Positions 1-25,558 of a stretch of DNA of 64,000 nt are shown here, piece after piece. Position 1 is the first letter of the stretch; the number at the start of each line of letters is the position of its first letter. The notes below the pieces were generated by a model. It was not told the DNA's origin. It did not search any database and was given only the letters and a program-made list of their open reading frames with translations. The DNA lies in assembly GCF_000150275.1 (NCBI RefSeq), contig NW_002060966.1:688880-752879 (forward strand). Reading direction: 5' to 3'. A program made the translations under genes and the position numbers. The stretch is from Trichoplax adhaerens. Its lineage: Eukaryota > Animalia > Placozoa.

Positions 1-19
1 ATCCATTGAATAGACTTAC

Positions 20-2527: not shown

Positions 2528-2866
2528 GTTACCTTATTAAAGATTGGTATGTTTTTGTTTAAAGATTATAACTATTTCTGTTAAGTTAGAAGTAATGCTT
2601 TACCGATTAGATAGAATTATTAACAATGCGTATCACATCACATTGTCGTTGCAGGCATATATAGCTTATTAGATTGTAGTGAATGGGTTCTGTAACCCAT
2701 AAATATGCAATCTACTAACGTCAATTAAGATATTAGATTTGAATAAATCCCTAATGTGGCAAAAATAGTCCGGCATCGCATTTAATTTTTGTGGTATTAT
2801 TTAACGATAGAACGTCTGGTAGAGAAGAATTTACCTATCTTTTCTCAAATAGCAATCGAAAGTAAT

Positions 2867-3153: not shown

Positions 3154-4017
3154 CAGTACTCACATACTTAGCGCAACCTATTGTAATCTCAGATCTTTAT
3201 ATAAACATCTCAATATAGCCGCTACAATACGAACTGTAAACGCCTTCTACAAATAGTCACTAAAGACAATCTTACACTCTAGCGTACAGATCAGCCTATT
3301 CTCGTAAATCTTAAATCGTAATCTAAGCTACATTCAGGGCTTTTTTTACAGATACTTATTAAGCTATCCTACTAAGATATTTCCTCTAAACTTAGGAATG
3401 GTACTTTGAACCTTAACAACCTTGAAAGTGATAGATACAATTTAGTTTGGCTAGCTGGCAATTACTATTTTAATCTATCTAGTCCTAAACTACTGTAAGG
3501 TTATCAACTGTTAAACACTAAAGTTCCAATTCAGGAGACCATAATACATTTCTTAAACATAGACATATATAGCACGTAACGTAGAAATAAGGTGCAATTC
3601 ACGAAGTCTGCTTTCGTGAAATATCTCAGTTGTGCTGCAATTTGACCAATCTTTCGGATATTAAAACTTACGCTCTTAATATTACAACAAGTTTTAAATT
3701 CACTCATATAACTAAATCAATTCAATTCATACAGCACCTATCTAATACTACAATAGCACAATAAACATAGTTATCTGCAAGATAAAATTTATCCTGTAAG
3801 CAATGATATAGTAATCAATTTCAATTCAAAATATTATTGTAATGCTATAAAGGACTATAACTGCTGTGCCTGACTAAAACTAAAAGATATCCTTAAATTC
3901 AGCATTTTATTTTAGCTATAGCTAATTTCAATCCACAGTCGGTATATGCTGTATGTACATAAAATATACTTAGATCGCAATCTATCTAAAATTTGATCTT
4001 GGATATTTTCCATGTAG

Positions 4018-6201
4018 GAGCAACAACTACATATATAATGGTTGTAAGCAAATGTATTAAAGAAGTTATTGTTAAACATTATTCAGAGATTGCTAAAGAC
4101 GTCCCCATAGCAGATATATTATATGATTTACGAGCAACAGCAATATTGTCTAATGAAGAAGTCAGCAAATTGAGAGATCACTGTAAATCTGACCAAGATC
4201 GCGCCTTTAAATTCCTAAAAGTACTAGAATCAAGAAGCGATAGGAATTTTTATCAATTTTGTACAATATTACAACACAGCGATATTAAAAATGTGCAAAA
4301 TCTTGGTAACAAACTGGAAAGAGCAGCTACCGCAGTTGTGCAGAAACAAAGTAAGTCCATTGCTTGACAACATAAATATTTTGTCAAGACATTAGAAAAT
4401 TGCCCTTAAGATTTGATTGAAGATTTATATTGTTAGATTTTTAAATTTAGATTGAAAAAAAATAGTAATGAGTTTTTAGATAGTTCATCTTGGCGTCTAA
4501 AAATAATGAATGGCCCTGAATATTCTTTTGTTATCACTGAATGATAACTTATAAAATTCAGTACAATTTTGTCTTTCTTAGGCTAAGGATAACTTGTAGC
4601 GTTTTTATAATGTTACATTGGGTAATATTAGTTACCCAAATATTATACTGAATGCAGTGCGCTGAAAATTATACTATACCGTGGCTATCAAAGACTGTAC
4701 GTCTTCGTTATTATTAGTCAAGCAAAATAGAATTTATTGCACATATCTAGAAATTTTTATTACAATTTATTGGTATCAAAATAACAGTATAGAATACATC
4801 CACAAGCATTATAATCAGTCTTAATCACTTACTGTTTAATTAAAAATAATTGATCATTACGTCGAACATTTTTTAAAGAAGTTTATACAATTGAATCGAT
4901 CATTCAGTAAGCTTTTTATTCCTTATTTACGAAATGTAATCTTAGTTAGTGATGGGAACTGTCATGTGACTTTCCCTGGCTATCAGCAACGATCTGTACG
5001 GCGGATTAATAGTTAGAGCGTTATCATCCATAAGAAGACTTTAATTAAAATATCTAGAAACATTTATAGTAGCAGTATGATATGATTTAATAAAATTTAT
5101 CGGCGTCAGTTATGCAGCAAAGCATATCAATATTATAATTTCAAATAATTTTTGCTTGCGCTACAATGCTGCAGCACGGTGTATTAACAGACAATGGTTT
5201 CACTTTCGTTTAGAATATAAAATAGTATAAGTTGATCATTGTAGATGGAGACATAAATACCATAGCCCCTCGTTAAATTGATAACATATGTATGAGGTCA
5301 AGACAGAAAGAAATTAAAAGTTGATGTCACATCATTTGAGAAATTTAATGGTAAATAGCAGATGATAGATTAAATTTGGATTAGATCTCATAACCTTAGT
5401 GTGAAATAGTAATCATTGCACACGATATTGGATTTATAAATGTTTTATAATAAGTAGTTCATAAATATTACATAACTTAGACTGAGCCATTAAATCAAAG
5501 GATAAATTTATCTTTCTCCTAAATTGAAATTTTTTCTTCAGTGGCTTTTAGTTCAGGTTACTTTTTTAGTTAGTATTAATTGATATTTACTGTCTTGTTT
5601 CGGATATAAATGAGAATGAAAGCTTTCAAAAATCAGAAAATAGCACTGAAAATAAGGTAATTTCATTTCATCCAGGCAATGAGAAAATTAGTGAAGAACA
5701 ACTTTTACAACAAAGCAAGATCGGGAACAAGCGAAAAAAGACCTAGGTAAAAAAATAATGGATCATTTTAGGATAATTCTTAGCAGCTACAACATCGCAT
5801 TTGCTGATAAGCTATAGTTTATATCGTTGATCTGATCCTTCATCAAATTTATTATATCCTATTTACGAAATGTAATCTTAACTCGAACAGATTTAAATAG
5901 AATATAATTTATTATTTGCTTCGGAAATTCTTACATTTTTAATTTTATTAAATAATTACTGGCATAATGATAACTAATACAAGGCTGTCCAAATGTACTT
6001 TTGTTATAGGAAGTGAAGACGAAAATGAGTCTGATCAATTTGATTCTGCACCTGGTAGTCCTGAAGAGACGAGTAGTAGCGAAAAATTAGAGTCAACATC
6101 ATCAGTCTTTGCTGATAGAAATAAAAGGAAGCGATATTCCTCTTATCATTTATCAGAGGCTTTAAGTCCAGCTCACAAGCGATCAAATGACTCTGATAAT
6201 G
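4018..6201 (+). CDS. CARD-containing gene fragment (CARD exon 4018-4350, acidic/basic exon 6010-6201; disrupted exon 5676-5746 between)
   Basis: CARD pattern IKEVIVKHYSEIAKDV..ILYDLRATAILSNEEVSKL..SDQDRAFKFLKVLESRSDRNFYQFCTIL; catgtag| and |gtaagt sites, both exons phase 1-1; Met at 4038; no 3' exon found. Confidence 0.7.
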
Positions 6202-7179: not shown

Positions 7180-10099
7180 TGATTTAACCTCTTTGATTAT
7201 TCAATTGATCTAACGTTTTAATTCCGACTTCCTGTGTCTATAGGTAGAATATACTTATGAAATGGGCAAGAATTGCGTCAAATTTTGATAACGTTAATAG
7301 CAATGCATAAACCTAACATCCTTACAAAGAAATCTAAATTTATGAACTAAATTGTATTAAAAGTAGCTGGAATCAAATAATAGCGTAAACCAAAATGATT
7401 GATCAAACCTCCATCGCTATATCAGACATTCTTCTTGAGCAGTCGAAGGACTAAATAGAAATATAAAATACAGGAAATGATTACATAATTTGACTAAAAA
7501 TAATTTAGATCAAAATAATAAATCTTAACAATTTATTTATTTTGCAACTGAAGAAGATAGTGTAAATTAAAGATAGAGCTAAACAGTGTCAGAAAAGCCT
7601 TTGTACAGATAAGCTTGCCTACACTCTTTGCTATTGCATATCTGAAATCAGCAATTTATTCAACATTATAAAATATTATTATTCAAAATATTGGCGATAA
7701 GTTTATTTGAATTTGTTATTATATAAATGTACATGTGTTACGGTTCATCATTACCGTAAATAAAAAAAAAGATATTTATTCATATTTTTTCTAATGTAGA
7801 GTTGTGATATGTTAAGTTGTTAATGGATTTTCATTAATGAATGTGTGATAAAGATTGTCACACTTGATTAGTGAGTTGTTAAGTAACAAGTCTAGTTGAT
7901 TTGTTAATTGGAGTAAGAGTGGCAAACACTCAATATTAATTTACATATATTTATTCTATACTGACTATCATAAATACTTATATGTTATACAAAATCAAGT
8001 ATATTGTAAATAGAATTATGCCGATAGAAACTGGCACAGGTATATAAGAGCGTGCCTTTAATCATAGAAGGAGTTCTTATATTACATTGCCTAGTAGTAT
8101 ATTCTATCGTTCGAATAAAGAGGATTTATGAAGTTATCTGGATATTCTTACTGCTAAATAAGGTCTTATACTGAGCTGGTCGAGTTAGTGAAGCTTATTG
8201 GCAACGGTATATTACGGTAGAGCGGTTACGCTAGAAATAATTAGTTACTTAAGCCACAAATGACGTTAAGACAGCATGTAAAAACACAATAACTGACTGC
8301 CCTTATGAAAACACCTAATAAATTACTAACAGTTGCGAAACTTATGCGTATCCTACTACCATTTCTATACCTTCAGTACTATAGCTACCCCCATCATCAT
8401 GGTGGTGCATCACACGAACATGCATCACTCTGATCCTTGTACTAACGCTTGCTGAAAGCAGCTCACAACGAAGAAATGTTCTATTTATATCTTGATCTAA
8501 GATATCTAAATAAGTAATCGGAGTTAACCATAGGAGAGTTCATCACAAAGTAAGATGCTGGATAAAGTGCTTTCAATGGTAAAGAGCAAATTGTTAATGG
8601 AGCAAGCTACATAGCTAAGAAATTTAATCATATTCTACGAATCACCTCTTTAGCTGATCATATAACAGATTTTCAGGTGATTTTACTGTCTTCGACATTA
8701 TTATTACTTCATTCTCTTTTTCGCTTGTTGCCTTTCCTACTTTATCGTAACTGTTATTCCCTTTCCCTTTTTCCATTGCCCTAATCACGCATAATATCCC
8801 TATTATCAATGCTATTTTCTGATTTCTGGGAGATTCCATGTTCACCTACGAGTACATATCCGATATAATACAGCAAATATTAAATTAATACTGGCTTCTA
8901 AACAAACTTAATTAGGAGGCGTTGAAGAAAAGGGTTTTAATTTAGAAGAAGGATTAATTTATGCTTTAGTTTAATCGCACAGCCATTACAGAATTATATA
9001 AGACCCATTTGTGAGAAAATGTGTTCTTTATTGCGTAGCATAAATCCTATAAGATTAAAATTAATTATTGGTACTTTAGATCAGCGTGTAAGCTGTTACA
9101 AAGGACATTAGCTAAGAAAGTGGAAGAAATAAATAATATAGCTGCAAAAATAGTCAAAATGCGAAGTTTTTATTAAAATTCAACATTAAAAATTTTATGG
9201 AGGTATTTAGGGCACAATAAAACTGTTTGCAAATATCTCTAGGCAAATAACTTTTGCGCCAAGTTTTGTCTAAGTATAGCCACATAAAGATATTACTTAT
9301 GTCGCTTTTACAAAGCAGCTCCATTATATACCGTGCATTATCTTTTTTAAATGCTAAAGCTACTTATTAATCCACAAAAAATAACCGAATAAATTTCAAT
9401 TTACTGAAAAGAAGAATAAAGCTTGGATTAAGGATGAGTTATTTCCTCAAGCTTTCTTGTCAAATTACGTTAACAAAATTAACTGGCGTAACCTGTTAAA
9501 GCCTAAATCTAAAAGGCAATTTCGACTGGACATTGCAATCATGAACAAAATTAATTACTTACTGTATAAGCCCGTATTCTTGAAACTTTAATGAATTCGT
9601 TCGAAATTTTGTCATAAAATCTACTTGCTACTGGTTACAAAAAATAAAATCTTGAAACTTGCCACAATGTATATTCCGTACACTGAATCCCCTCTGATAA
9701 TATATTTTCAAAAAATAATTATCATAAAATAATTATGCTTTGGCATAATTTAAACTTTGTAATAAAAATACGTAAAGTAAACAGACTTTTAAGTAGGTAC
9801 TGATTTAAACCCTCTATTACTGAAAGTCAAATATACTCAGGTAGGTACCTTGCAGATAGAATTCTTGTTATCACAGAAACATCTACAAATTCACACAGCT
9901 CAACTTAAGTCAACTCTAAATGTTCCCTTTATATAGGAACCATTTACCTTGCAAACAACATTGATATTATTATTCTACCTTAATTTCAAGGTAACACGAT
10001 AACATGTCTGTACCGCTAAGCATTATTACGAGGGCTAGTAAATTTGACTTCACTATTCTTTAATTTGGGATTGTTTTAAAATAGTGCTTAAGTGCAGCT

Positions 10100-11630
10100 C
10101 CAAATAAGTTTAAGACTAAGATTAAAAGAAAGCATATAATCAACTGCAGTGAACTATAACATCTACGTTATCTTCGCCCTGAATTTTTAGGTCGATCTCT
10201 GGAGCTAGATTATACAACTTTATAGCATAATCATATCTTTTCAGTAAGTGATAGATGTTCCCTATGTCATAGTATGTTCTAGAAATATGAAGATTATTAG
10301 GATTTAATATGGCTAACCGAGTTCGTAAGTAGTTCTGATCCATAGAAAGGGCTTCAAAATACAGGCTCTGTTTTCAGCACACGTATCCAAGTCAGGCATA
10401 GAAAAATGACACATCTAGGCTTTCCTCTCCTAGAGCTTACTGGCGAATTATTAAGGATTTCTAGTATAGAACTGTTGCTTTCTGATTGCATTGTTAAAAA
10501 GCATAAATTTCTGCCATATTGTAATAAGATCAGAAAGAATCAACAAAATTCACTCCAACTACAAGCAAGCGGATTTTCTGGGATTTCATAAACATAAATA
10601 GGGCTGCATCTAAGCGACATTGAGCCTTATAGACAATACCGATATTGTCTAAGCAGTATGCAACATCTGTACTACTTTGGCCAAAGTTGATCAGAGGAAT
10701 TTGAAGCGATTTTTGATACTTAACAAGAGCTTTGTCAAATTGACCTTCCATCTAATGCGAGTACGGTAAGCAATGTAATACTAAGATCTTTCTGCATATA
10801 AACTATACTCTTTTAGTAATTTCAACCGCATATCTAATGATTTTGCAAAGATCTTTCTATCTAGTTTGTATCTTCTTGTAATACTAAGATCTTTCTGCAT
10901 ATAAACTATACTCTTTTAGTAATTTCAACCGCATATCTAATGATTTTGCAAAGATCTTTCTATCTAGTTTGTATCTTCTTTGATATGCGATTACTAATCC
11001 AATATCATCGTGAGACATGGAAACTAATAAGTTAGTTACTTCTACTAATTTAAACCAAAAATTAAGCAGTTTTCGCAGCATTTGCAAGGAATGATCATAT
11101 TCCTTATTTCTCCGATACATAATGCCTAAGTTACGGTAAGCTTCTACCGTATCCAAGTGATACTCGCCTAAAATCTGAATCAGCATAAAATATGCACTAT
11201 TACTTATAGTAGTAGATTGATACCAAAGACATTTCAAACCGAATAATGGAGCTAAATGACCTAAGCATCTAGCCGTTCGTAAGTCATTCTGTAGTTCTTC
11301 AGATAAAATTTTAGTTTGCATACAATAATGCATGGCTTCTTGGTATTTTCCTAGTTGTGGAGAGATTTTCGATATATCGAGATATATATCGCATGCTAGC
11401 AGATGATTTGGATTTGTATTTGATGGACAATCTAAATAGCCAATTGTTGCTACCACTTAGAGATATGTCGATAACGCGCCTTGAAAATTTCCTAGACAAT
11501 CTCTAGCCAAGCTAGCGGATCGAAGCTTTTTCATTCAAGTCAGATTATTCAAAAAGAAGCAGGATTTTTGCTCGTAGTAATTACCCCTAAGATCAACCGA
11601 ACTATTCATCTGCATGTTAATTCGTATACA
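10100..11630 (-). pseudogene. TPR (kinesin-light-chain/nephrocystin-3-like 42-aa repeat) pseudogene
   Basis: Fragments LGEYHLDTVEAYRNLGIMYRRNKEYDHSL, STDVAYCLDNIGIVYKAQCRLDAAL, HISRTYYDIGNIYHLLKRYDYAI in different frames with stops. Confidence 0.85.
10775..10980. repeat. Perfect 103-bp tandem duplication inside the TPR pseudogene
   Basis: 10775-10877 = 10878-10980. Confidence 0.92.
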
Positions 11631-13109
11631 TGGTTTACTTATTCGTCAGCTATCCCAATTTAGATTTATATATTATTTTCTTCAACAAAATGCTCAGTAA
11701 CTGAAATGTACACAAGTTTAGTAAATGTAGGGTATCGTAAATTTTCTGAATGGGTTACTTATATAGCCTTTAGTGGTGTAGTGATCAAAACTAATTGCTT
11801 TTGCACTACGAACATAGCAGTACTATACTTGAATGGCATCATCGAATTTTCAATTATGCCTAAAGTAATTGCTCTAGAACTTTAAATTTACTAATGAATT
11901 ATATAATATAATATAAACACTTACTACAGCAATTAAGTTTTAAAAGTATCAGTAAACTGGCAGTAACAATCACAGCAGGTGATACGATAATGAATTTCTG
12001 TGATGAGAAAATTTGGCAAAATGAGTTAGCATGCACTCTACCAACTTAAAATCGTACTATATTCCGTGGAATTTCCATGTGTTTCGCTAATTATTGATTA
12101 ATAAGGCTAAATTAATATGAAGCTTTAATTGCTTAGAAAGAGATTTCAGCGCCGTAATAATCAAATAAAGTGCAAAATAAGAAAGTAATTCCATCGTATC
12201 GTCTAATGAAAAGCTTATTACCAGCATTATCATTATTCTTTTCCCCTGCACAAAGGTAACGTCTCTAGTTACATAATGACGCATCCCAATAAAAGTAATG
12301 TTTCGTTATAAGAATTCTATGACCAACCTTACTTGCAAAGGGATCAAACCACAAATTTTTTAGCTTGTAATGGATTTCAAAAGCCAATATATGATAAATA
12401 CATAGGCGTAATACCGGTACATAAATGACATACTACACTAAGGACTAAAAAGTTCAACATCTTACATAGCGTAATGTAGAGTTCGATAAGTCAACGGTGG
12501 TAGATTTAATTGCTACGTAGAGAATAACACTAAGATCTTAGTAGAAGAAAATACTTCATTGTAGACTATAATTGCGTATAATGTGTAGACATGATGAAGC
12601 AGCACGTAAACTGCTCGCGAAATAATATGAGAAAATAATAGCAGTGTGACTATTACAACTAACAAAATCTGTAGTATTATAGCTTAGAGACAGTAGGAGA
12701 TAAAACACGTACAGAGAACTAAAATTCAGGACTAGACGCAGCTTTTACTATAAAAGATTACGTAACGATAAATACTTGCAGAAAATAGCAAAGACGGTAA
12801 GTGCTATAAATAATAAAATGCAGCAAGCTATATTTGAATATATCTGGTAGCTAATAGACTGCAAAGATATCGATATTCAACAATACAGAGCACAAAATGT
12901 CTATAAATAAGAGAATACGACAGCTTTAGTACGACCTAAATACATAGACATAGAACACCGTAAAGTAGAATGAATTATTACTTTCCAGTTATTTTTAATT
13001 TTAGCGTTCACTGTAATACCTATATATTACAGTAGTTTAGCGCATCAATCATATATTCTCATTGGTCGATGTATTCATAGCATGAGATATTTTTTATATA
13101 GACTTTCAA

Positions 13110-13392
13110 TTAATTTTCATCACCAGCAGTAAACTTTTTTTCCAATTTTTCTATTATATTTCCAAGTTGGCAACTACTTAAGATTTTGATTAAACGATCC
13201 AACTTCGCTTTTTTAGGATATCTACCATACCATTCGTCTAATAATTTCATGCAATTTGAGAATCTTCCATCCATGCTGTCAATAATATCTTCAACATCTG
13301 CTGAATGAAATTCCTACTTATAAGCAAATTGTTTCAACTTCTTTCTGGTGATAATTCGGCAATAATCTCAAAGCATTCTCTTCTCTTTTCAT
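13110..13392 (-). pseudogene. Decayed death-domain exon (former 3' end of the Roco gene)
   Basis: After a catttcag| acceptor: DEKRRECFEIIAEL, frameshift, KKLKQFAYK*EFHSADVEDII...NCMKLLDEWYGRYPKKAKLDRLIKILSSCQLGNIIEKLE = death-domain pattern with an internal TAG (13314-13316). Confidence 0.75.
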
Positions 13393-13685
13393 CTGAAATG
13401 CAAATGGGATAGCATTAAGTTATGGAGCGTAACAGTGTTAGAGTATGAAGTACTACTAAACTGAAATAGCTAGCACACCACATTAGCTATTCTTCTAGAT
13501 CTCATATCGCAGTTATTGTTATATCAAAATCTATTCTGGGAACACACATACTCTGAAATCTAAGCTGGAATAGCATCTGAAATTTTTTTCTTATTTTCCG
13601 CACTAAGTCGCTATTTCAAGCTGTGGTGTGCTTTAGAAACTACGCGTAATTGAGACGAATTGACTATTATTGCTAATTTACCATC

Positions 13686-16600
13686 TTATAATGCCATCTT
13701 AGTAGCTATTTCTCCTTGCCGAAAAGTATTAGATTCTTGTATAATAGGTTCAGTATCTATCAGTTTGTGTTAATAGAAACAGGTCATATACATATGTCGA
13801 TATGCAATTATAGCAGATATTATAGCATTGTTCTAGTTATAACAGAGCTCTAAATTTAATTTTGCGTAAATAAAAGAGAATGAAATCGTACAGATTAAAT
13901 TACTTCCACAGATTCTATCAATCTGCTGAATTTAAGCAACTTTGCTTTATCATAACACTATTCTTAATGCATAAATGAGATCTACGTTTAAGCTCTTATC
14001 ACTACTTGATCAATAGCGACGGTATTAACGAAATGATATAGTATAATTACGATAGTCCGTTAACTATTTTAAATTATATTTTTTTAGTATTGTCATGCAA
14101 TTGTAAGTCACAAATTATAGAAATCTAGTAAGAATTCGGTATAGGACATAATACGTATCTGATAAATGAATTACAAGAGAGTACTTTTCTAAGAATTTAG
14201 TAACATTAGTTAAAAGCCATCAACGACGAATCAAAGACCATACCAATTTTTCCGTAAGACTCTACCTACAAATTAATCACCTTGTTTGTCAGATTCTTTT
14301 CTTATCTTATATTCTAGATTTACTTGTAGTGATTGAACTAAATAATCAATATTTTATCAAACGGAATTCTTTAATACAGCTAATCGCGATTTTCCATTAG
14401 CGAATGCGGTACATGATATAGTATTAATTTGATAAACGTAATTATCCCTTAGATATATGATCGTAGTTCAATAATTACAAGGAATAACATATAAGTCATG
14501 AAATTTTTTGTGTAAACCTGACTAAGTCGCCTATTGACCAAATAGAACAGAATTTTCTTATTATCAATGTTATTTTGTGATCTTAAAAGCCTCTGTACTC
14601 ATTTATAGGCGAATAATATAGCAAATATTAAATAAATATAAACTTCAAAAGTAAACTGAAAAAGAAGCCTCTGAAAAATGATTTTTAATATTGTAGAAAG
14701 ATAAATTTATGCTTTAGCTCAGTCGCTCAACTTAAGTTTTACGATGTTTACTTGCTCATCATAAAGCATTTATCAGCTAATATCCTATAGAAAGATTATA
14801 ATTTCGCATTACAGTTATAAGATCTAATCCAAATTTAATCTATAGATTGCCATTTATTTTTAAGTATCTCCAATGCTTGACAGCGACTTAGATTTCTTAC
14901 CGTAGTGTCTTAATCCCTTGTATGAATTATCTATTTCACTAAGGACTGCAGTATTTGCATCTATCCTTGCGAAGATCAACTTATACTATTTTATATTCTA
15001 CACGATAGTACAATCATCATTATTAATACTTGAAACAATTACGACATAGCGCATACAGATTTGTTTGAAATTGTAATGTTGATATCCTTAAAGGTACTGC
15101 AAAAGTAACAAAGCTAATTTTATTAGATAATATAGTACAAGATTAACGTAACATATCGTAAAGTTACAGTAAATAGCAGAATAAAAACGGAAATTAAACT
15201 TGCTTTTCGTCGAAGTTATGCTATAATAATGCTACAGTATGGTACTTTCCGGAAACAGGAAATAGTTTTGACGTCACAATTGATATCATTTAAAAATTGT
15301 AACGTTCATACTAGGTCATTACAACGAATATGAAGGACTTACTGGGAAGTAAATTTTGATCTTTCTCGACATCAATGTTACATTCTTGGATTTTTCTTGA
15401 CTTTTCTTTAATTTCATCTGCCATATGTTTCATTTTTTCTCCCAATTTTTGTAATGAATTCAAAGAATGCCTTGCTAATAGATCGCAAACCTTATAAATA
15501 TCTCGATCACTACAACCTAAAAGGATATCCAACAAAGCTGCAGAACGTTCAGCTTTTATTTGTTGTCCATTCATAAAATCAATATCTTCAGGCATTAAGA
15601 TACCCATTCGTAGCAAAAAATGCTTAATATGATCATATGGCTCCGCGCTCTTAAAGTCTTGACGATAATGCCATAACACTTTACGTATATTGTCGCTTAA
15701 AGCTGGCAGACTTTGTGAATCTAAAGCTAGAAACGTTCAAATAGACCCATAAGATAAATCTTGATCATGCTTACTATGCTTATAATATTGTAGATGTAAT
15801 ATATTTGGATTTCACCAACAACATGCTTCTTTTTAGCAACTGTGGTAATGTTGAAAACGAGAACATAAAACGTGAAACATAATTTAATCTACATGTATAA
15901 CAATAGCATTAATAAATCCACAAGGTATATAGCTATAGAAATAAAGGTAATATCTTATCTAAACAGAAAATTTGATGAAATAAAGTACCGCTATTCTGTT
16001 AACAGAATGGATGTTTAATTTCTTTGTTACTTCAACAACATAAACTAAAATAATGGAATAGCAACGGAAATTAAACTTATTCTCCCGACAATAAAACGTA
16101 TCCTATTCAGGACGGCAATTAAAACTTATTTAGTAAACTCACTAACCATTTGTGTAATCTAATTGCTTGCTAGCTGCCTTGGAACGTTTTCTTTTAATTC
16201 CAGAAACTGGTGACATTAGCTCTGAATATTCGCGGCTATTATGCATTGAAGGCATATCAGCAACAGTTTCGCAGTCAGACTCATTTTCGTCTTCTTCTAT
16301 AATACAAGTACATTTGAACTTTATTATATTATCATTACAATCGTAATTGTTATATAAAATTGAAGATGGAAGAATTCCTAAACTAGAACTTTATTTCTGA
16401 AAGCAAACGATAAATAATTAATAAAAGCGTCAGTTTTAAGGTTACATCGTATGTTGGACATTACAAGGTTGCTGAAAGATCAGATCAACTGTATGAACTT
16501 TAGTTTATCAATAAATGCGACACTATAACTACGAAGAATTATCCAAAAATGATTCATAATTTTTTACCTCGCTCTCGTTTTCGCCGGTCCTCTATCCGAC

Positions 16601-19600
16601 TTTGTGGTAAGTATTGCTCTCCATTAATTTTTCTCATTGCCTGAATTGAACAGAAAGATCTAATTATCAATGTTATTTGTTGATTCTCGGAAGATTTTAT
16701 ACTCATCTATATTTGAAATAATATTGCAAATATGAATCAATCTTAACCTCCGAAACAGACTGAACTAAAAGCTATGAAGAAAAATATTTAAATTTTGGAG
16801 TAGAATAAATTTATACTTTACTTTAATAACCCTGTTTACGTTGTACAATATTTATTAATTGCTCATCGTAAAATATTTATAAATCAATATTGCATGCAAA
16901 AGCTACTATTTCACATTAAAGTTATAAAATCTTATAACAAATATAATCTATCAATTATCACTTATTATGAGGTATCTAAAATAATGTAAGAGCTACTCTG
17001 ATTCCTTTACTATCTTAATTCCATCCATGAATTATTTGTTTAATTAAAGACTAAATTATTTATGTCTATCTTTGCAATGATCAACTTATATTATTTAATA
17101 TTCTAAACGATAGTATAATCATGAACTTTTAATTCTACACATTTAACACTATATCGTATTCAAAAACTGTTTAAAATTATAATATTAATATCTTTTACTA
17201 TGTAACTAATGGTGCTAAATTTTATTAGATCATCTCATACTGCTACTATAAAAGTTCCTTGATTCTCTAATCGTATTTCTATTGATGAAATAACGTCATG
17301 ATTACCAATTGTCATATAGTTAGTTACTTATAGCCAGAGAAAATCGCTTAACAATCTCAATTACTAAACCATTTCACTTGCATTTCCTTTATGAGAGCTG
17401 CTATGCCGTTAGAGCGATAATATACCTTGGAATATGTCTTCGCATTATCAGCCGACGATGTTAGAGTATCTTCTTTACCACACGTTGATAGTTTTGATGG
17501 ATTAGAGAAAGTAACAACTTGATCTGATGATGTTGATTTGATACCTTTACAGGGCGAACGCGACGAAAAGAGTACTATGGAAAGACATACAAATTATAAT
17601 TAGAAATTGTAGATTGGATTCCTTTCTGTAATATAAAAATTTTGTATTATACCGAATATAGATAGCTTTGCAGTCTGTTTCTACTATACTCAAATATAGT
17701 TTGTTATGTTTAGTTATTTATAGCACCTGCAGTCTTCATTGTTTCCTACAATCATTTGCTATTACTTTGTCTGTTTATGGCAAATATCATATCCAATTCT
17801 ACAATCCTGTTCTCTGCGTGAGTTCTATCTCTTAATTTATAAGTACTGATGATTTATGCCATAGATTCGCCAGTTGAACTAGCCGCAATAGTAGTACTTC
17901 CTCACGTTACTTCACGACAGCTCATATGCTGATCTACCGTAACTACCGCATTGTATCTCCGCTATTGTCTACAACACAGTATCCACTTTTATTAAAACCC
18001 TTTCCATAATTTCTGAGAATAGCTACCAAATCCGCAGCCGCTGACTCTCCGAACCCTCCATCACACTTTTAAACTATAAAGTGCCAATTAGTTTTAATAT
18101 CAATCTTGTAATACTGCTCTATAAAGTAAAATTGCAGAAACTTATATATTTCATTTTGAGTTGTAAGGTATTATTTTTGGCTCTATCTGTAGGATCTAGG
18201 TAAAAACTGCCTTGATAAAGTATTAGAAATCTGCTAATTGATACAAGCAATTAATTATTAAAGAGTGCCGTATGCGTGCTAACGCTTCTGAAGATACTTC
18301 ACTGCAGACTTATATACTGCTATATGGCACCTACTTCATTATCATTTGGTGTACAGTTTGCATTAAGTTATCGATTACCTTCTGTAAGACAGTATAATAT
18401 TGTATTCTAAGTTGATGATATATTTAGTAATGTCTACCGTAGGTGTTGTGTTCAATATGTGATAGATATTCTCGTTAGAGGCTTAAGTATTAAAGATAGC
18501 TAGCTTAGTAACTGTAATCCTTTTGAAGAGGAGCGCTACAGTGCTCACACTAGAGCTTCACATGAAAGGTGTAAACTATCCTGTATTTGAGATGCTAATA
18601 CTAAAGTGTGTAGTAAGTAAGGTGCTAAGACTGTAAACGCGGAAAGGTATATAAGCAAGTAGTTTACTATAGTAAGATAGTTCTTTCTTGTTAATAGAAG
18701 ACCTCAGCTAATCGATTACGTTGTATCTTCGTAAAGGAGGTTTTGTTCGATAAATCTTAATTTTGTAAAGTTTTGAAGATTCTTGATCTATCAACCTCAC
18801 ACCTTCTAAATTCAAGTATTCTCTAAATAGCTATAAGCTGATCTTGCAACTCTTTCGAGCTATTAATCACATTCATGGAGAAAGTATTTTAAGAAAGAAC
18901 ATATCAAAATCAGTCTTAATCAAGAACTATGGCGCTACTAACTATGATCATCGTAATCGGTGACAAAATTTTCATACTATATGGAGGATTTATTATTGAA
19001 ACCTTCCGTTAACAGCGTTAGAAAACCAATACACGAAATTACCTGAATCCCAACCTTTCATGTTTGCTAGCTTATGCTTGGTACGGCATTTAGCGTTAGT
19101 GCATTTGATTATTCGTGCTGCAACATGACTAGAATAAGCCATTAATTGATCACATTTTAGGCAAGGAAAAAAATATCCGCAGTCAAATTCTTGTCGCTCA
19201 GGGTAAACATCCTTCACGATTTTCGATAGCATTGTTTTAAAATAAACATATAATTGATCGTTGCTTAATGCTGAAATTGCTTTCGTTTTAATCTGATAAT
19301 CTTCTTTCGGTTCGCCTATAATTTCGTAGCAATACTGAATTCTAATATGTGATGCACTCTTTCCAACTATTATAGTATAATTACCATGTTTTGGTAAGTA
19401 TTTAGCGCTATGATAATATAATTCAACATCCAATTCTGATTGGGATGACAGTAAAAACTGATGAAAGATTTGATCTGTAATATATAGAGGTGAGTGTTTG
19501 TCGTAACCTAGATAAAGCCAAGACGATTGAAATCCGCATTTTAATTCGTTGCCTGTTTCTTTCTTACGTAAAGATAATAAATACGGGAGAAAATACTGTT

Positions 19601-22600
19601 CATATGTACTAGCTTTTATATCCTCCAGATTTCTTGAAGCTTTGTAAATTAAACGATTTTGTTCCATTACTTGTAGCAGAGAATCAATATCTTCTTCCAA
19701 TAATGCTTCATGACTTATTGCACACTTTACGGAGGCTTTAGTAACGATTCCATAGTCCCTAGCCCATTTGCAATATTCTCTGCTCTTGCTACTGCTGGCA
19801 AGACGACGTTGCTTATAATTATCGACCAATGTAGAAATTTTGCGAAAGTTATCGTAAAACCAACTTAATTCTGTAACTATAAGACTATCAGTCTCACTGT
19901 ATTGACTAAATATTATTTCTCCTATGCCGTGTAAAAATTTTAGAACGTTTATAATCTCACTCTGCTCCATTCTGTTTGTAGCTTTAGTGTAAACTTGTTC
20001 TAGTGTCTGAATATATTGCATACCGGTGGAATTCTGCTTATCTAGAGTATGGCTAATATTCCTATCAGATACTAGTATAGGATTATCGAATAATTCCGCC
20101 ATTATGTACCATTTAAGTTTAATTTTCTGTTTGAAGAACGGAACGTCTAGGATACAATTTTGAATTTTTTCGCATAATTTGTTCCAGCTACTGCTATTGA
20201 CCGTCTCCTCTAAATCTTTACTCTGATTTCCATCAACTGTATTGATTATTATTTCCGGAGAATAAAAGTGTGATTTATACTGTGGCATTTTCATATCCAA
20301 CTCATCCATAAATTGACTTCGTCTAGTCCATTGCGCTTCTTCTGTTAATTTATCATCGCTATTAGTGGCAACAAATAGAATGATTGGCAATGGAATTTCG
20401 TCCTCTTGACTATCAATGCTAATATATGACTGATTCTCTTTTGTATTCCAATCAATTGCATTAATCAGCCATTCCTGAAATGAAGTCATATAATCATGGC
20501 GACCAACACCGTAATCACTACTGACAATTTTATCCAGTTTGACACTGACATCAAAAGGAGCAATGTAAACATTATGCTGAAATTTGAAGGGTTGATAGTA
20601 AGCGTGATTGTTAAAATTCCAAATTTTAGCAAACTGATTAGCATGGTAATATTTACGCCTCTGATGGAATTTCTGGAAACATCGCGAGAAAGACGGTGAA
20701 GATAAACTTTTAGTAGTTTCATTAAGCAGGCTGATAATATTGTCACTAGCTGTGGTGATTTCGTTATCATTATTATTAACGGGATAGTCTATATCGATTT
20801 TGTCATCTATAATTTTATCACTACTCGAAATGGCAATTCTACTTTTATCACTAGACTGATTGTTGCCTATTTCAAGAGCAGCGGAAAAAATTCTTTGTAA
20901 CTCAGGGTTTGGTGATATATTCCCCTGCTTTTCTATGACTGATAATACTTTATTATCGATGAAAGATTGTCTATCAAAAATAATTTTTTCGTCCGAATTA
21001 CTTGCTTGTTTTATGGTATCCAAGTTGATTAACACCGTTGTAGCATTAGGAGAACTTTCAGGTTGTTTGGTTAGTAATTTATATATAAAAGATTTGTCTT
21101 CATGATTTGGTCCAATAAGCATTATATTTGCAAAGTTATTTGAAAATTCACCACGAACAAGCGCTGTTTCAAAGGCTTCTTTAAATTCTCTTATAGCTGT
21201 CCCTGATTTGAAATTTCAATATTAGTCAAGAAATAAACGGTCTATCAAAATCGAAGCCTAAGCAGCTGTCTATTTGAGATTTTTATTTCAATTAGTAGTT
21301 TATCTAATTTCATTTGAATAATACTGTATAGCATCGCACGTTATTTGATCAGCTAATCATTTAATTAAGCAAACTATCATTATTAATGATCTTTCTACCG
21401 TATTTAAAATTATAACAAGTAGGAATGAAGCTATTTCTATATCAGCTACTTATATGCTGAAGAAATAATTGCTATATCAAATCAACATGTTGCAAGACCC
21501 AATAATTATTCCATGAACAAAGTGAAGTGCGATAAATTGACTTTGTACTCACTAGCTATGGTTAAAATAGAGCTTTTGTCCCTAACTTTTACACTAACAG
21601 ATTTCCTTGCAGTAGTTTTTTGCTCGGATAATTCACTCTCGCTATAATCTATTAATAAGATAATAAAATACTGATTAACTTTCGTCATAAAATTATACAA
21701 TCTTCATTAAGTAGTATTAATGAGCTGTACTACCTGATGATGATGAAGTTAGCAATAGTCCAGTCACCGCACATTGACGGTATTTGCGTTTTGTCTTTGA
21801 TGATATAAATATTTTACGACTTGCCATTTGCTGCGAATAGCCTTCATCGTCACTTTCGCTATACGCTCGAATTCTTATACCTAAATTAAATTTCAATATT
21901 TCTAGTTAAATCTTTATACTCGTCATATAAATACGGATATTTGACCGGAACTATGAACGGCCAGTTAATAAACATTAGCTATTTTAAATAGTATTCGGAA
22001 GTCTCGGTCTCAAATACGTCAGCAAATATCGACAATTATGTCTAATGCATTCGATTAAGCAATACCACTTATTAGTCGTACTATTTTTGCTATTCATAGG
22101 TAAAATATCAACTGTAGTATCCTCTATATTAAAACTCTTATTATTTGTTACACTAGTGCTACCTGGCAATTAAAAATTAAGAAAATATTGGTACGTCATT
22201 GTTACAGAGTTATACACTTTAGTATCGAGGTAATAGCAGAAACAATTATGTTAGGATAATTTTGTTGATTTACCCCTATATGAAGAGTTTCTGATTTAGT
22301 TATGTAATATTTAAATGTAACTCTAGCTTTTATGGTGATACATACAGCCTACTGAAATTATTAGCTTAATTAGGGAATCGAGAATAATCTTCTTACAATT
22401 CAAATCACTGTGATTTTAATTTACTTATGGTAGATTGTAGATTATCGTAGAAATGTTCCGTGATAGACGATTTTGTAATCTGACGATTTTTGATTAGTCA
22501 ATGGATATCTATGTTCGTAAATACTGTTATCTTAATTAGGTAGCAGTAGATAAAATTAGCGTTTGATTCATTATCAGGTTTAAACGTCAATATCACTAAC

Positions 22601-25558
22601 TAGGGTGTCTTTGCGATTGTAAAAGAGTCTATAAATACGATAAATCGTATAATAAAGTGAGTTCTTATGATTAGTGTTTAAGATAAGATACGAGGCGTCT
22701 AAGTCTTTTTGTAGTCTGCTAGTATAGGAAAACAGTTCATGAAAGAGTAGATACTGCTCCCTGATATGTGCTTCAGGGAATCGACTGATTGATCGTGCAT
22801 TACGTTATCTTGTAGCAAAGCTGTTTTGTAACAGTAATGACATTCTTTTGAAATATTTTTTCAATTAAAAGAATAGAAATGAGAGTTTCTAAAAGGATTA
22901 TATGGAACAAAAATATCCTGCAATTAAGCCAAAAAATATTCGTAAGAAAGTTCGCTTCTTTGACTGTACATAATTCTTATCTCTAATGATGCGGAATATA
23001 CCACGTTTCATTTAATAATCGTCATCAATTTGAGCTACAGAAATTACTGCTAACTCTAGCAAACAAAGTATTCTATTATAGAATTAAAGGCTATTTAATT
23101 ACCTTTATATATTAATAATCTAGACATCATAAACAAGAGAATTTGAATTATTTCTGCTCGTATTACAATCTATAAGACTTGATATTCATTTGAAAATTCT
23201 CATCTTATGTTTCTACTTGATGGAAAATCTAGATACTTACTACATCAGTATGGTTTAAACGTAAACTCTGTTACTAATATAAATATAAATATTTTAATAC
23301 GTAATTTTACTGTCACAATATATTTGAAAGCAATTATTAGTGCTGTAATCTATTGCTACAGCTACCCTTACGGTACATGAAGCAGCACAGTACTTGTAAT
23401 AAATTTTACTTTAACCTGTAAGATTAATTCCTCAGCCTATGGTACAGCAACTAGAATCTTTAGGTTAATGCACTAACGAATGGCTCGATATAACGTAACT
23501 CTCATACTTTTTATTGTTCATTATCCAAGTTATGCAATCTATCAGTCGTTATAAATATATTTGTTACGCTATCAGTATTTCTTTGAAAACAATGATATAA
23601 CACATTTGTAAGCAATTATCAGAGCTGAAATCTATTGCTACAAGTACCCTTGCGACATATAAAACAACACAATACTTATAGAAATTTTGTAGTATAGTCA
23701 AACACAGCTTATTACTCGTGCATAAACTAACATACAAAATCGAGTGCGAAAAATTATTTGGTTTATCTTCTTAATACAACTATTTTGTACCTGGGTGATC
23801 GCTTGAATTATCAGACAGTATCCTGACATTTGTCTCCCCATCGTTACCTTCATTACTACTTAATGGTTCCTCTATGAATTTAGCTATCTTATCAATTTCG
23901 TCCTTCAACCACTGAAAGTCTTCTATATCTTGTTCATTGCAACTATTTCCATTATTTCCATTATTTTCGCGATTTATCAATGAATATGGACGGCCTGAAA
24001 GTAATTTATATATCTTGCGTAGTTTATGATAAGCTGTCTTCATTTCTTTATATGGCTTTTGTTTCTTTATATCTACTAAGCAGCTTCTATCTAATGCTAG
24101 AATGCTATCGCTACTGCGTATATATTTTTCCCATCTAGTCTCACTATAATAGGATCTCACAAAATCGATTTTATGCTTATCGCAGATTTCTTTCCGAAAT
24201 TTTAAACTTTCCATGTACTCTTTTTTAGAGGCGTCTAACATATTAAGACTCTTATATAATTTTGCAATTTCATCTCGAATATCTGCAATCAACAGGCGGC
24301 GATGGTTTGATATTCCATTTAGAATTTCCTTGGATTTTATTAAATTTTCCTTTGCTGTTTTGAATCTGGATTTTTCTAAGTGTGCTTTTCCGATCCCATA
24401 GAAAGCTTTACTCAATTCAACTTTATTTCTATACGTATCTTCTGGGACATTAACAACCCTGTTGTAAAAGAGCGTTGACACTTTAAAAGAATTATAATCA
24501 CTTTCCCTGTCTTTCTTACGCTTGACTTTTCTCATTCTGAGAGATATTTCACCCAAAATGTTATTAATTTTTGCCCAAAATTGATAATCGTTGTATTCTT
24601 CATAATCCTTATTTTTTTTTATTACTATTTTGAACCAGCTATTAGCTTCTTTTAATTTATCTATAGCAAAGTAAGCTTTTCCTAAATATTCCGCTGAATC
24701 TATTATGTGCCAACTATTATCTTTAAAGTTTTTCTTCTTGATTCTATATGACCGCCGAAAGCAATCTATAGCTCGAAGATAATCACCCTGCATATAAAAT
24801 AGATTGCCAATGGTATCATTAAGTAAAGCCAACTTGACAGTCATTTTTATATCCGACGGCAATGAAGATTTTAATTTATCCAAAAGTGTCTTAGATAAAT
24901 TTGAAGGTGTTGAGTTTACAGTTGTTTCCTCAAAAATTTTTTGTATGCTTCGTAGTACTGTTATTGACTTCTTGACATTTTGAGGTTTACAGTTTTCAGT
25001 CGTTTTCTCAGTTTTCTCGTTTTCAATCATTTTCTCAATGCTGTTTTGCATGCTTCTTGATTGTTCTCTTACAGACTTCAGAATAACAGATCGAGCCATG
25101 TCATATTTATATTGTAACATATAAACACTTGCTTTACCACCTTGAACCAAAGTTAGTAAATTATTGGGTTCATTCGAATTTAAATTTCGAATAGCAACTT
25201 CAAAATTACGTAAAGCTTCATCATACTCTCCATTTTTGATACTTACATTGCCCATTATATACTGAGCTTCAGCAAGTAAAGAATTTAGAAATTTTTCTTT
25301 GAAATGTGACTTTTTTGCCTCAAAGTCTTTCTTAACTTTATCAAGTTGATGAAGCTGAAATTTAGACTTCATTAAACCAATCCAACTTCTACAAGTAAAT
25401 CTGGTATAATCTTTATCATCAATGCACTCCAACTGCTCCGCATCCTTGTTCGTCTCATTATAACACTTTATTGCATTGTAATAGCTTCCATTATCGTAGT
25501 AATCGTCTGCTTGATCAAGTGTAGATATTAATTTTTCATTTAATGGTTTATTATCCAT
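13686..25558 (-). CDS. Multi-exon TPR-Roc(degenerate)-COR-Cys4-CARD Roco-family protein, ~1690 aa (exons 25558-23791, 22162-22082, 21880-21734, 21648-21553, 21202-19043, 17574-17426, 16640-16568, 16296-16147, 15720-15343, 13756-13686)
   Basis: Manual splicing: every junction is GT-AG and frame-compatible (phases 1,1,1,1,1,0,1,1,1) with no stop until TAA at 13688-13686; joins ORFs 23780..25558, 21984..22169, 21506..21700, 18993..21122 and 15311..15679. A 33-nt symmetric microexon at 14313-14281 is also possible. Confidence 0.72.
15343..15720 (-). CDS. CARD exon (symmetric phase 1-1)
   Basis: IRKVLWHYRQDF...HFLLRMGILMPEDIDFM...AERSAALLDILLGCSDRDIYKVCDLL fits the CARD pattern; ctttag| acceptor, |gtaagt donor. 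Confidence 0.8.
19043..21202 (-). CDS. Roc-COR exon (2160 nt, symmetric phase 1-1) with C-terminal CxxC...CxxxxC motif
   Basis: Roc-like IMLIGPNHEDKS, KIWNFNNHAYY, ILFVATNSD; COR-like LKFLHGIGEIIF, LIVTELSWFYDNFRKI, YFLPYLL; PCLKCD...IKCTNAKC; acceptor aaatcag| at 21203 and donor TCAG|gtaatt at 19042. Confidence 0.85.
23791..25558 (-). CDS. TPR-repeat exon (first coding exon of the Roco gene)
   Basis: 592-aa ORF with TPR-like helices (AEAQYIMGNVSIKNGEYDEALRNFE, LNDTIGNLFYMQGDYLRAIDCF, SKAFYGIGKAHLEKSRFKTAKENL); CCAG|GTACAA donor just before the ORF stop. Confidence 0.88.

What the first reader, a model, noticed from the sequence alone, without database searches (positions are those of the whole stretch)
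13110..25558. Hidden giant TPR - pseudo-Roc/COR - Cys4 - CARD(-DD) gene: an NLR/Apaf-like sensor built on a Roco core
Seen: five ORFs that look separate, plus small unannotated exons, join through ten canonical frame-compatible exons into ~1690 aa; a remnant death-domain exon follows. Known: Roc-COR is a dimerising switch module, CARD/DD recruit caspases and adaptors, TPRs act as sensors, and placozoans have expanded Roco genes with TPR/death folds. Inference: a sensor-switch-effector immune or cell-death receptor using Roc-COR in place of NACHT/NB-ARC, in reversed order (sensor N-terminal, CARD C-terminal).
Basis: partly seen in the sequence, partly recalled or inferred. Interest (0 to 1): 0.88.

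Follow-up and report, generated by a model that had tools for sequence, protein, structure and literature searches.

The report
Trichoplax TPR–pseudoRoc–COR–CARD Roco gene
This is one real, expressed, about 1,680-codon gene of the placozoan Trichoplax adhaerens, already annotated as TRIADDRAFT_61614, that combines a TPR sensor-like arm, a degenerate Roco GTPase core and an Apaf-1-like CARD, and it belongs to a Roco expansion that has already been described.

Summary
The observation largely holds. The window is T. adhaerens scaffold C1391. The ORFs at 25558-13100 (minus strand) form one multi-exon gene.

- **RNA evidence:** contigs from three studies confirm every junction from 19043 downstream.
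- **N-terminal junctions:** these rest on two independent public gene models, on splice sites and on reading frame.
- **Domains:**
  - TPR is strong in Pfam.
  - Roc-COR is shown by homology to paralogues that pass the Pfam Roc and COR-A cut-offs, and by a family profile that hits bacterial Roco structures.
  - The Roc motifs are degenerate (G1 GxxxxDKS, G3 NFNN).
  - A Cys4 motif is conserved across the family.
  - The CARD is supported by a profile search and by an AlphaFold model (Z 15, 1.5 Å to the Apaf-1 CARD).
- **Death domain:** it is a true relic, with a frameshift and an in-frame TAG. It lies in the 3'UTR, behind a stop codon in a 75-nt exon.
- **Not hidden:** the gene is TRIADDRAFT_61614 (1652 aa). 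T. adhaerens ROCO genes with TPR, CARD and death domains were reported in 2014.
- **New details:** the degenerate G1 and G3 motifs, the death-domain relic, and a mosaic structure produced by gene conversion within a four-gene tandem array.

The scan had already flagged a paralogue upstream (s1-739426). An immune or cell-death role remains an inference.

The parts
23791..25558 (-). Exon 1: start codon at 25558 and the TPR region (Pfam TPR hits at 25273-25187, 24826-24629 and 24271-24197). Donor GT follows 23791.
   Evidence: P0055 and P0007 start at the same Met.
22066..22162 (-). Unverified: it is absent from both public models of this gene and from the model of paralogue C.
   Evidence: Not tested by RNA.
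21734..21880 (-). Exon 3 (147 nt), linker.
   Evidence: Models P0004 and P0055. Canonical AG/GT and frame.
21553..21648 (-). Exon 4 (96 nt), linker.
19043..21202 (-). Exon 5 (2160 nt): degenerate Roc, COR and a Cys4 motif. Sub-features: G1 GPNHEDKS 21113-21090; G3 WNFNNH 20621-20604; G4-like ATNSD 20372-20355; COR-A 20030-19575; Cys4 (CxxC-x16-CxxxxC) 19163-19086.
   Evidence: The donor at 19043 is confirmed by RNA.
18383..18801 (.). A 419-bp dispersed repeat (SINE-like, no terminal inverted repeats) inserted in intron 5. Not part of the coding sequence.
17425..17574 (-). Exon 6 (150 nt), linker.
   Evidence: RNA joints in X7, X4 and X10; frame.
16568..16639 (-). Exon 7 (72 nt), basic linker.
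16147..16296 (-). Exon 8 (150 nt), acidic/basic linker.
15343..15726 (-). Exon 9 (384 nt): CARD. The six-helix core lies at about 15703-15416.
   Evidence: RNA joints. Atlas CARD clusters. Profile hits to the CED-3 and Apaf-1 CARDs. AF2 pLDDT 88.7. Z 15.0 and 1.5 Å to the Apaf-1 CARD.
14281..14337 (-). Exon 10 (57 nt), a cassette exon: present in one X10 contig and skipped in X4 and X10 contigs. An alternative donor at 14244 brings an early stop.
13682..13756 (-). Exon 11 (75 nt). It carries the stop codon used in the observed transcripts (TAA 13688-13686).
13113..13392 (-). Last exon, 3'UTR in the observed transcripts. It holds a full-length death-domain relic with a frameshift at about 13348-13340 and an in-frame TAG at 13316-13314.

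Best explanation
The locus is one expressed protein-coding gene of Trichoplax adhaerens: TRIADDRAFT_61614, on scaffold C1391, minus strand, about 12.4 kb, with 11-12 exons and about 1,665-1,715 codons depending on cassette exons. It is a member of the placozoan expansion of Roco proteins.

Domain order, N to C: a TPR array of about 590 residues; low-complexity linkers; a Roc-like G domain; COR; a family-conserved Cys4 motif that is probably a zinc ribbon; charged linkers; and a CARD closest in fold to the Apaf-1 and CED-4 CARDs.

Shown here:
- The G domain has lost the second P-loop glycine (GxxxxDKS) and the whole DxxG switch-II motif (NFNN).
- Its bona fide paralogues keep GxxxxGK[ST] and DFGG.
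- A once-terminal death domain has decayed (frameshift plus stop) and now sits in the 3'UTR.
- The gene is a mosaic of its tandem neighbours, made by gene conversion or unequal exchange.

Inferred:
- With those motifs gone, the Roc module most likely no longer works as a GTP-driven switch. It probably serves as a structural partner of COR, the dimerisation device of Roco proteins.
- The protein probably acts as a scaffold. Its TPR arm binds a ligand or partner, and its COR-mediated dimer or oligomer presents CARDs for homotypic recruitment of CARD-bearing partners such as the CARD-caspases of Trichoplax, in cell-death or innate-immune signalling.
- By analogy this works like the apoptosome or an NLR. 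It is not a member of that family.
For: One gene:
- RNA contigs from three studies join all exons from 19043 to 13392 with GT..AG, and the frame stays open to the TAA at 13688.
- Two independent public models (P0055, P0004) join the TPR exon to the Roc-COR exon at 23791>21880, 21734>21648 and 21553>21202. Those junctions are canonical and frame-compatible.
- RNA runs hold about 0.46-0.49 of the words of 15560-25558. That is more than the exons downstream of the TPR exon can supply.

Roco identity:
- phmmer finds 48 relatives. Paralogues aligned over the whole exon at E 1e-43 to 1e-52 carry Pfam Roc (46.8 and 41.4 bits, cut-off 27) and COR-A (42.7, 49.2 and 39.7 bits, cut-off 35.3), together with TPR and Death or CARD.
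- The family profile hits Chlorobium Roco RocCOR (3dpu, E 2.3e-9), Methanosarcina Roco (4wnr) and LRRK2 Roc.
- This protein's own COR-A hit scores 24.5 bits, E 2.8e-5.

Degenerate motifs. The same G1 sequence appears in H2 protein P0004.

Cys4: C654, C657, C674, C679 and W691 are at least 90% conserved in 16 family members.

CARD.

Death-domain relic.

Selection and expression: dN/dS is 0.36 against paralogue C over the Roc-COR exon, the ORF is intact, and the mRNA is spliced.
Against: - No RNA evidence was obtained for the N-terminal junctions, because only one read-laying run of 6 kb was allowed.
- Pfam Roc and Pfam CARD do not hit this protein's own sequence, and COR-A is below the curated cut-off. 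Domain identity therefore rests on transitive homology and on a model built from an alignment of CARD paralogues.
- I did not fold the Roc-COR exon.
- Loss of GTP binding is inferred from motifs only. Lys and Ser of the P-loop and Asp of G4 are retained.
- Exon 5 is hardly more conserved than the neighbouring introns within the conversion tract (94.4% against 93.1-93.5%), so constraint is shown only by dN/dS.
- Nothing here tests ligand binding, oligomerisation, CARD partners or an immune role.
Confidence: 0.72

Rival explanations
1. The protein is a Roco-family scaffold with no role in immunity or cell death. An example would be a cytoskeletal, ciliary or trafficking adaptor like other KLC/NPHP3-type TPR proteins, with the CARD used only for self-association.
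For: The TPRs are of the TPR_12/TPR_10 (kinesin-light-chain / nephrocystin-3) type, and relatives are auto-named Nephrocystin-3 or Kinesin light chain. Civiero et al. 2014 speculate on chemotaxis or phagocytosis roles for the placozoan ROCO expansion.
Against: The whole family ends in death-fold domains (CARD or DD). The CARD is closest to apoptosome CARDs. The tandem array with gene-conversion mosaicism resembles immune-receptor clusters.
Confidence: 0.18
2. The Roc domain is still a working GTPase or nucleotide-binding switch that uses non-canonical motifs, so the protein is a regular GTP-regulated Roco.
For: Lys and Ser of G1 and Asp of the G4-like motif are retained. LRRK2-type Roc domains also deviate from NKxD (my own knowledge). 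dN/dS over the Roc part is 0.35.
Against: Both Asp and Gly of DxxG are replaced (NFNN), four residues of switch II are deleted, and the second P-loop Gly is Asp. Bona fide paralogues in the same genome keep all of these. From established Ras-superfamily knowledge, these residues contact Mg2+ and the gamma-phosphate.
Confidence: 0.08
3. The gene is a decaying paralogue on its way to becoming a pseudogene. It is transcribed but has no function.
For: It has a death-domain relic with a frameshift and a stop. A stop-bearing 75-nt exon and an alternative donor give early stops. It is a mosaic of neighbours. Exon identity is about the same as intron identity in the conversion tract. Broken TPR fragments lie nearby.
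Against: An uninterrupted reading frame of about 1,684 codons runs across at least 10 exons. The mRNA is spliced in three studies. The orthologue in strain H2 has the same motifs. dN/dS is 0.36.
Confidence: 0.08
4. The mosaic gene is an assembly chimera of tandem paralogues in the 2008 Sanger assembly.
For: Sharp switches in the best-matching paralogue at 23597/23598 and at about 18818.
Against: An independent H2 contig and model (P0004, 4,144 bp) spans 24469..20328 across the 23598 switch at 96-100% protein identity. A DNA-like run (X1) covers 13120-19119 continuously.
Confidence: 0.03

Closest known systems
Trichoplax adhaerens ROCO expansion (Civiero et al. 2014, PMC4104024; public model TRIADDRAFT_61614 / B3SBH0)
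   Same: Same organism and same family. ROC-COR cores flanked by TPR, CARD and death domains were reported for at least 17 genes. This gene already has a 1652-aa public model that matches the window at 99.7-100%.
   Different: In the papers I found and read, nothing describes the degenerate G1/G3 motifs of this tandem sub-clade, the Cys4 motif, the death-domain relic or the gene-conversion mosaic. In Pfam only TPR passes the cut-offs for this protein. RNA shows a different 3' end and a different exon-6 acceptor from the public model.
DAPK1 (human Roco: kinase-ankyrin-Roc-COR-death domain)
   Same: A Roco core followed by a C-terminal death-fold domain used in cell-death signalling (my own knowledge; the family is reviewed in PMC4104024).
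   Different: This gene has no kinase or ankyrin repeats and has an N-terminal TPR instead. Its live effector is a CARD, not a death domain, and its G motifs are degenerate.
Apaf-1 / CED-4 / NLR (STAND NTPases)
   Same: A tripartite logic of repeat sensor, nucleotide-binding/oligomerisation core and death-fold effector. The CARD model superposes on the Apaf-1 CARD at Z 15.0, 1.5 Å over 93 residues, and on the CED-4 CARD at Z 12.9. Placozoans also have expanded Apaf-1-like genes with TPR or WD40 repeats (Kamm 2019).
   Different: There is no NACHT or NB-ARC. The core is Ras-like Roc plus COR, which dimerises rather than forming a ring. The domain order is reversed, with the sensor N-terminal and the CARD C-terminal.
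Prokaryotic Roco (Chlorobium tepidum CtRoco, 3dpu/6hlu) and LRRK2 Roc-COR
   Same: The family profile matches their switch-II region and COR-A (E 2.3e-9 for 3dpu; E 0.004-0.02 for LRRK2).
   Different: Those are active GTPases with LRRs. Here the repeats are TPRs and the DxxG motif and the P-loop Gly are lost.
Brown-algal LRR-ROCO candidate immune receptors (Teng et al. 2024, PMC11378527)
   Same: Expanded, clustered Roco genes proposed as NLR-like receptors that diversify by exon shuffling.
   Different: Those have LRRs rather than TPRs and no death-fold effector. Diversification here is by gene conversion between tandem paralogues.

Membership tests
Roco (Roc-COR) proteins | A Ras-like Roc G domain | tested here: inconclusive
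   Pfam Roc does not hit this protein. The region aligns end to end with paralogues that pass Pfam Roc (46.8 and 41.4 bits), and the family profile hits CtRoco and LRRK2 Roc. Homology is met. The fold was not modelled.
Roco (Roc-COR) proteins | A COR domain directly C-terminal of Roc | tested here: met
   COR-A hit at ORF residues 365-516, 24.5 bits, E 2.8e-5, below the cut-off of 35.3. The same region in paralogues scores 39.7-49.2 bits. The family profile aligns to COR of 3dpu.
Roco (Roc-COR) proteins | Canonical GTP-binding motifs: G1 GxxxxGK[ST] and G3 DxxG | tested here: not met
   G1 is GPNHEDKS and G3 is WNFNNH, with a 4-residue deletion in switch II. Paralogues have GPxNVGKS and WDFGGH. 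This protein is a degenerate (pseudo-GTPase-like) member.
CARD (death-fold superfamily) | Sequence match to CARD profiles | tested here: inconclusive
   This sequence has no Pfam CARD hit. 10 of the 17 sequences in the alignment (the query plus 16 genome homologues found with it) hit Pfam CARD, best E 3.7e-12. The alignment profile hits the CED-3, Apaf-1, RAIDD and BCL10 CARDs at E 1e-8 to 1e-3.
CARD (death-fold superfamily) | A six-helix bundle with a kinked helix 1 | tested here: met
   AF2 with alignment A1 gives pLDDT 88.7 and helices 11-19/21-27, 30-39, 45-52, 57-68, 73-84 and 89 onward. VIA-align gives Z 15.0, 1.5 Å over 93/93 residues to the Apaf-1 CARD, and the top 66 matches (Z of 8 or more) are essentially all CARDs. 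Caveat: the model was guided by CARD paralogues.
Death domain (PF00531) | An intact, translated death domain | tested here: not met
   Pfam Death scores 30.3 bits against a cut-off of 22.6 on 13313-13113. The domain is split by a frameshift and a TAG and lies behind the stop of the observed mRNAs.
NLR / Apaf-1 (STAND NTPases) | A NACHT or NB-ARC nucleotide-binding oligomerisation domain | tested here: not met
   No NACHT or NB-ARC hit in any exon or in the public model. The core is Roc-COR.
TPR-repeat proteins | Several TPR units | tested here: met
   TPR_12 58.8 bits, TPR_2 49.2 bits and TPR_1 28.5 bits, all above their cut-offs.

The most novel reading that the evidence does not exclude
A tandem sub-clade of placozoan Roco proteins has given up the GTP switch: DxxG is lost in all four array members, and the P-loop Gly is also lost in two of them. 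These proteins would work as nucleotide-independent, COR-dimerised platforms that present an Apaf-1-like CARD to activate CARD-caspases. In that reading they are a Roco-based functional analogue of the apoptosome or of NLRs. Their sensor (TPR) and effector (CARD or DD) modules would be reshuffled by intron-to-intron gene conversion, as in plant R-gene and animal NLR clusters.
Probability: 0.25. Interest if true: 0.6.

Novelty: new member of a known kind. Interest (0 to 1): 0.38.

Why it matters
If the inferred function holds, animals at the base of the metazoan tree built death-fold signalling platforms on a Roco core as well as on STAND ATPases. That would be a second, independent route to NLR/apoptosome-like receptors.

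A naturally degenerate Roc domain that keeps COR also bears on the debate over whether Roc-COR in LRRK2-type proteins acts mainly as a dimerisation device.

On the practical side, this work improves the annotation of TRIADDRAFT_61614. It identifies domains that database cut-offs miss and gives an RNA-supported 3' end. It also documents gene-conversion mosaicism in a placozoan receptor-like gene cluster.

The gene model and the family architecture are already public, so the result is incremental rather than surprising.

Tried and rejected
- **Single-sequence AF2 of the CARD exon:** it gave a poor model (pLDDT 60.7). I replaced it with the alignment-based model.
- **Foldseek E-values for the CARD model:** they were weak (best 0.037), although every top hit was a CARD. 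The VIA-align second look gave Z 15.
- **Pfam on the CARD exon and on the Roc part:** neither gave a significant family.
- **A 38-nt 'mini-intron' (GT..AG, in frame) that would bridge the death-domain frameshift and stop:** I rejected it. It is too short for a normal intron, and no such joint appears in the RNA contigs.
- **P0006/P0050 as the model of this gene:** I rejected this. They are paralogue C, 90% identical only in the Roc-COR exon and 34% in the TPR.
I could neither confirm nor exclude it. The apparent similarity to an exon of paralogue B is low-complexity and not positionally colinear.
- **Complex prediction:** I did not run it.
- **Joined spliced protein:** I searched the exons separately by reference and used the public model P0055 where a whole protein was needed.
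Full report
**Origin and observation**

The window is the last 64 kb of Trichoplax adhaerens scaffold G000:C1391 (688880-752879 of 752,879 bp). On the minus strand they are 25558..23780 (592 aa), 21122..18993 (709 aa), 15679..15311 and 13274..13110, with several 50-65-aa ORFs between them.

**Transcript evidence**

I found RNA-type runs that hold 0.40-0.49 of the words of 15560-25558.

Contigs of three runs from three studies (X7, a declared RNA-seq library; X4; X10) show the following minus-strand introns, all GT..AG:
- 19043|17574
- 17425|16639
- 16568|16296
- 16147|15726
- 15343|14337 and 15343|13756 (a cassette exon, 14337-14281, with an alternative donor at 14244)
- 14281|13756
- 13682|13392

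A fourth run (X1) covers everything evenly and behaves as genomic DNA.

- The 19043/17574 junction is exact.
- I followed the frame exon by exon without using a joined sequence in any search. It stays open from exon 5 into a 75-nt exon (13756-13682) that no one had predicted, and ends there at TAA 13688-13686.

**N-terminal half**

I obtained no RNA junction evidence here. Two independent public models of this very gene agree on 23791>21880, 21734>21648 and 21553>21202:
- P0055 = TRIADDRAFT_61614 / XP_002117593.1, 1652 aa, 99.7-100% identical to the window.
- P0004 = TrispH2_012052 of strain H2.

The sites are canonical and phase-compatible. It can be kept in frame only with another acceptor (21873), so it stays unverified.

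The word share of the RNA runs implies that at least about 1 kb of the TPR exon is present in them, because the downstream exons cannot supply enough words. Adding the exon lengths gives 1684 codons, or 1665 without the cassette exon.

**Domains**

- **TPR.** Several Pfam TPR families score above their cut-offs.
- **Roc-COR, direct evidence.** This protein's own sequence gives only a sub-threshold COR-A hit (24.5 bits, E 2.8e-5; cut-off 35.3) and no Roc hit.
- **Roc-COR, family evidence.**
  - An exhaustive phmmer search found only 48 relatives at E of 1e-3 or better.
  - Every named relative I looked up is from T. adhaerens or Trichoplax sp. H2. A few unnamed ones come from ENA or Logan assemblies.
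  - Distant paralogues that align over the whole exon (E 1e-43 to 1e-52) pass Pfam Roc (46.8 and 41.4 bits) and COR-A (39.7-49.2 bits). They also carry TPRs plus a C-terminal Death domain or CARD.
  - A profile of 16 family members hits the RocCOR structures of Chlorobium Roco (3dpu, E 2.3e-9; 6hlu), Methanosarcina Roco (4wnr) and LRRK2 Roc.
- **Degenerate G motifs.**
  - In the family alignment the bona fide members read GPxNVGK[ST], WDFGGH and ASHGD.
  - This gene reads GPNHEDKS, WNFNNH (with four switch-II residues deleted) and ATNSD.
  - All members of the local tandem clade have lost DxxG.
  - The P-loop Gly-to-Asp change is shared only with paralogue C and is also present in the H2 orthologue.
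Loss of nucleotide binding itself is an inference from Ras-superfamily knowledge.
- **Cys4.** C654, C657, C674, C679 and W691 of the ORF are at least 90% conserved across the family, which is compatible with a zinc ribbon.
- **CARD, sequence evidence.**
  - Pfam is silent on this sequence.
  - Language-model features point to CARD clusters (0.91).
  - The exon finds 24 further exons in the genome. Of the 17 sequences I aligned (the query plus 16 of these), 10 hit Pfam CARD.
  - The profile hits the CED-3, Apaf-1, RAIDD, BCL10 and ICEBERG CARDs (E 1e-8 to 4e-3).
- **CARD, fold evidence.** An alignment-based AF2 model (pLDDT 88.7) has a six-helix bundle with a kinked helix 1. It superposes on the Apaf-1 CARD at Z 15.0 and 1.5 Å over 93/93 residues, and on the CED-4 CARD at Z 12.9.

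**Death-domain relic**

The last exon (13392-13113) matches Pfam Death at 30.3 bits against a cut-off of 22.6. It is colinear with the whole C-terminal death domain of paralogue TRIADDRAFT_61416, down to the stop. However, the helix-1 piece is in another frame (frameshift near 13348-13340), and there is an in-frame TAG at 13316-13314. Because the observed mRNAs stop in the preceding 75-nt exon, the relic is 3'UTR.

**Context**

The gene is the first of four head-to-tail paralogues on the minus strand:
- A: this gene.
- B: TRIADDRAFT_61612.
- C: TRIADDRAFT_61609, whose 1697-aa public model has the TPR, Roc-COR and CARD-exon regions colinear with gene A.
- D: the locus the scan had already flagged as s1-739426.

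Broken TPR fragments lie between them.

Gene A is a mosaic:
- 18818-23598, introns included, is 92.6% identical to gene C.
- 23597-24841 is 94% identical to gene B, with the switch inside intron 1.
- The rest is only 65-79% similar to any neighbour.

An independent H2 contig spans the switch point, so this is not an assembly artefact. Within the tract, exon 5 (94.4%) is hardly better conserved than the introns (93.1-93.5%), and dN/dS is 0.36.

**Comparison with what is known**

- Civiero et al. 2014 (PMC4104024) reported at least 17 T. adhaerens ROCO genes whose ROC-COR is flanked by CARD and death domains, TPR and LRR repeats. Teng et al. 2024 repeat this.
- Kamm et al. 2019 describe placozoan NB-ARC/Apaf-1 expansions and two CARD-caspases, but not the Roco genes.
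- DAPK1 is the classic Roco with a C-terminal death domain.

The architecture and the gene model are therefore known. The additions here are the domain assignment for this particular 'uncharacterized protein', its degenerate G motifs, the Cys4 motif, the RNA-based 3' end, the death-domain relic and the conversion mosaic.

**Verdict**

This is a real, expressed Roco gene with a TPR arm, a degenerate Roc, COR, Cys4 and an Apaf-1-like CARD. It is a new, somewhat aberrant member of a known placozoan family. The NLR/apoptosome-like mechanism is a reasonable analogy and is untested. The joined spliced protein was deliberately not assembled for any search or fold. Exons were searched separately by reference.

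Noticed in passing
window 18818-24841, compared with G000:C1391 upstream of the window (loci L028-L032): Gene A is a patchwork of its tandem neighbours. 18818-23598, introns included, is 92.6% identical to paralogue C (TRIADDRAFT_61609). 23597-24841 is 94% identical to paralogue B (TRIADDRAFT_61612). The switch point lies inside intron 1. This indicates gene conversion or unequal exchange that swapped the TPR and core modules.
   Followed up: partly
window 18383-18801: A 419-bp dispersed repeat with sharp ends and no terminal inverted repeats. More than 100 candidate copies were found in the genome, and the 40 that were scored are 92-95% identical. Depth is about 200 times the baseline in the DNA-like run. 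It sits in intron 5 and is also present in RNA contigs. It looks like a young SINE-like element.
   Followed up: partly
window 9954-11492 (-), and about 14.5-16.2 kb before the window start (-): TPR-only fragments with broken reading frames lie between the full-length paralogues (Pfam TPR_12 42 bits on a 190-aa ORF). They are probably remnants of further array members.
   Followed up: partly
window 13120 and downstream (lower coordinates): An X4 RNA contig of 2,517 nt runs from exon 13756-13682 through 13392-13120 and continues about 2.2 kb beyond the laid stretch. This is either a long 3'UTR or read-through towards the TPR fragment. The only AATAAA/ATTAAA signal found between 13392 and 12900 is at 12999.
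   Followed up: no
window 3993-4367 (+): A plus-strand ORF with a bona fide CARD (Pfam 28.0 bits against a cut-off of 23.9), lying between paralogues A and B on the opposite strand. The gene it belongs to was not determined.
   Followed up: no
window 1-2541 (-) and upstream: This is the 5' part of paralogue B (TRIADDRAFT_61612, 100% identity). Its public model lacks most of COR relative to the H2 orthologue P0003, which may reflect a deletion or an assembly gap (50 Ns in the region).
   Followed up: no
window 15028-15679 and 18772-19072: Low-depth RNA contigs read through the donors at 15343 and 19043 into the introns. These are unspliced precursor or intron-retention forms. The public model P0055 ends by reading through 15343 to the stop at 15311.
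   Followed up: partly
Trichoplax sp. H2 proteins P0054, P0004 and P0002: In the H2 annotation this one gene is split into three models on three contigs: TrispH2_009746 (the TPR ORF alone, 592 aa), TrispH2_012052 (partial) and TrispH2_011652 (partial).
   Followed up: yes
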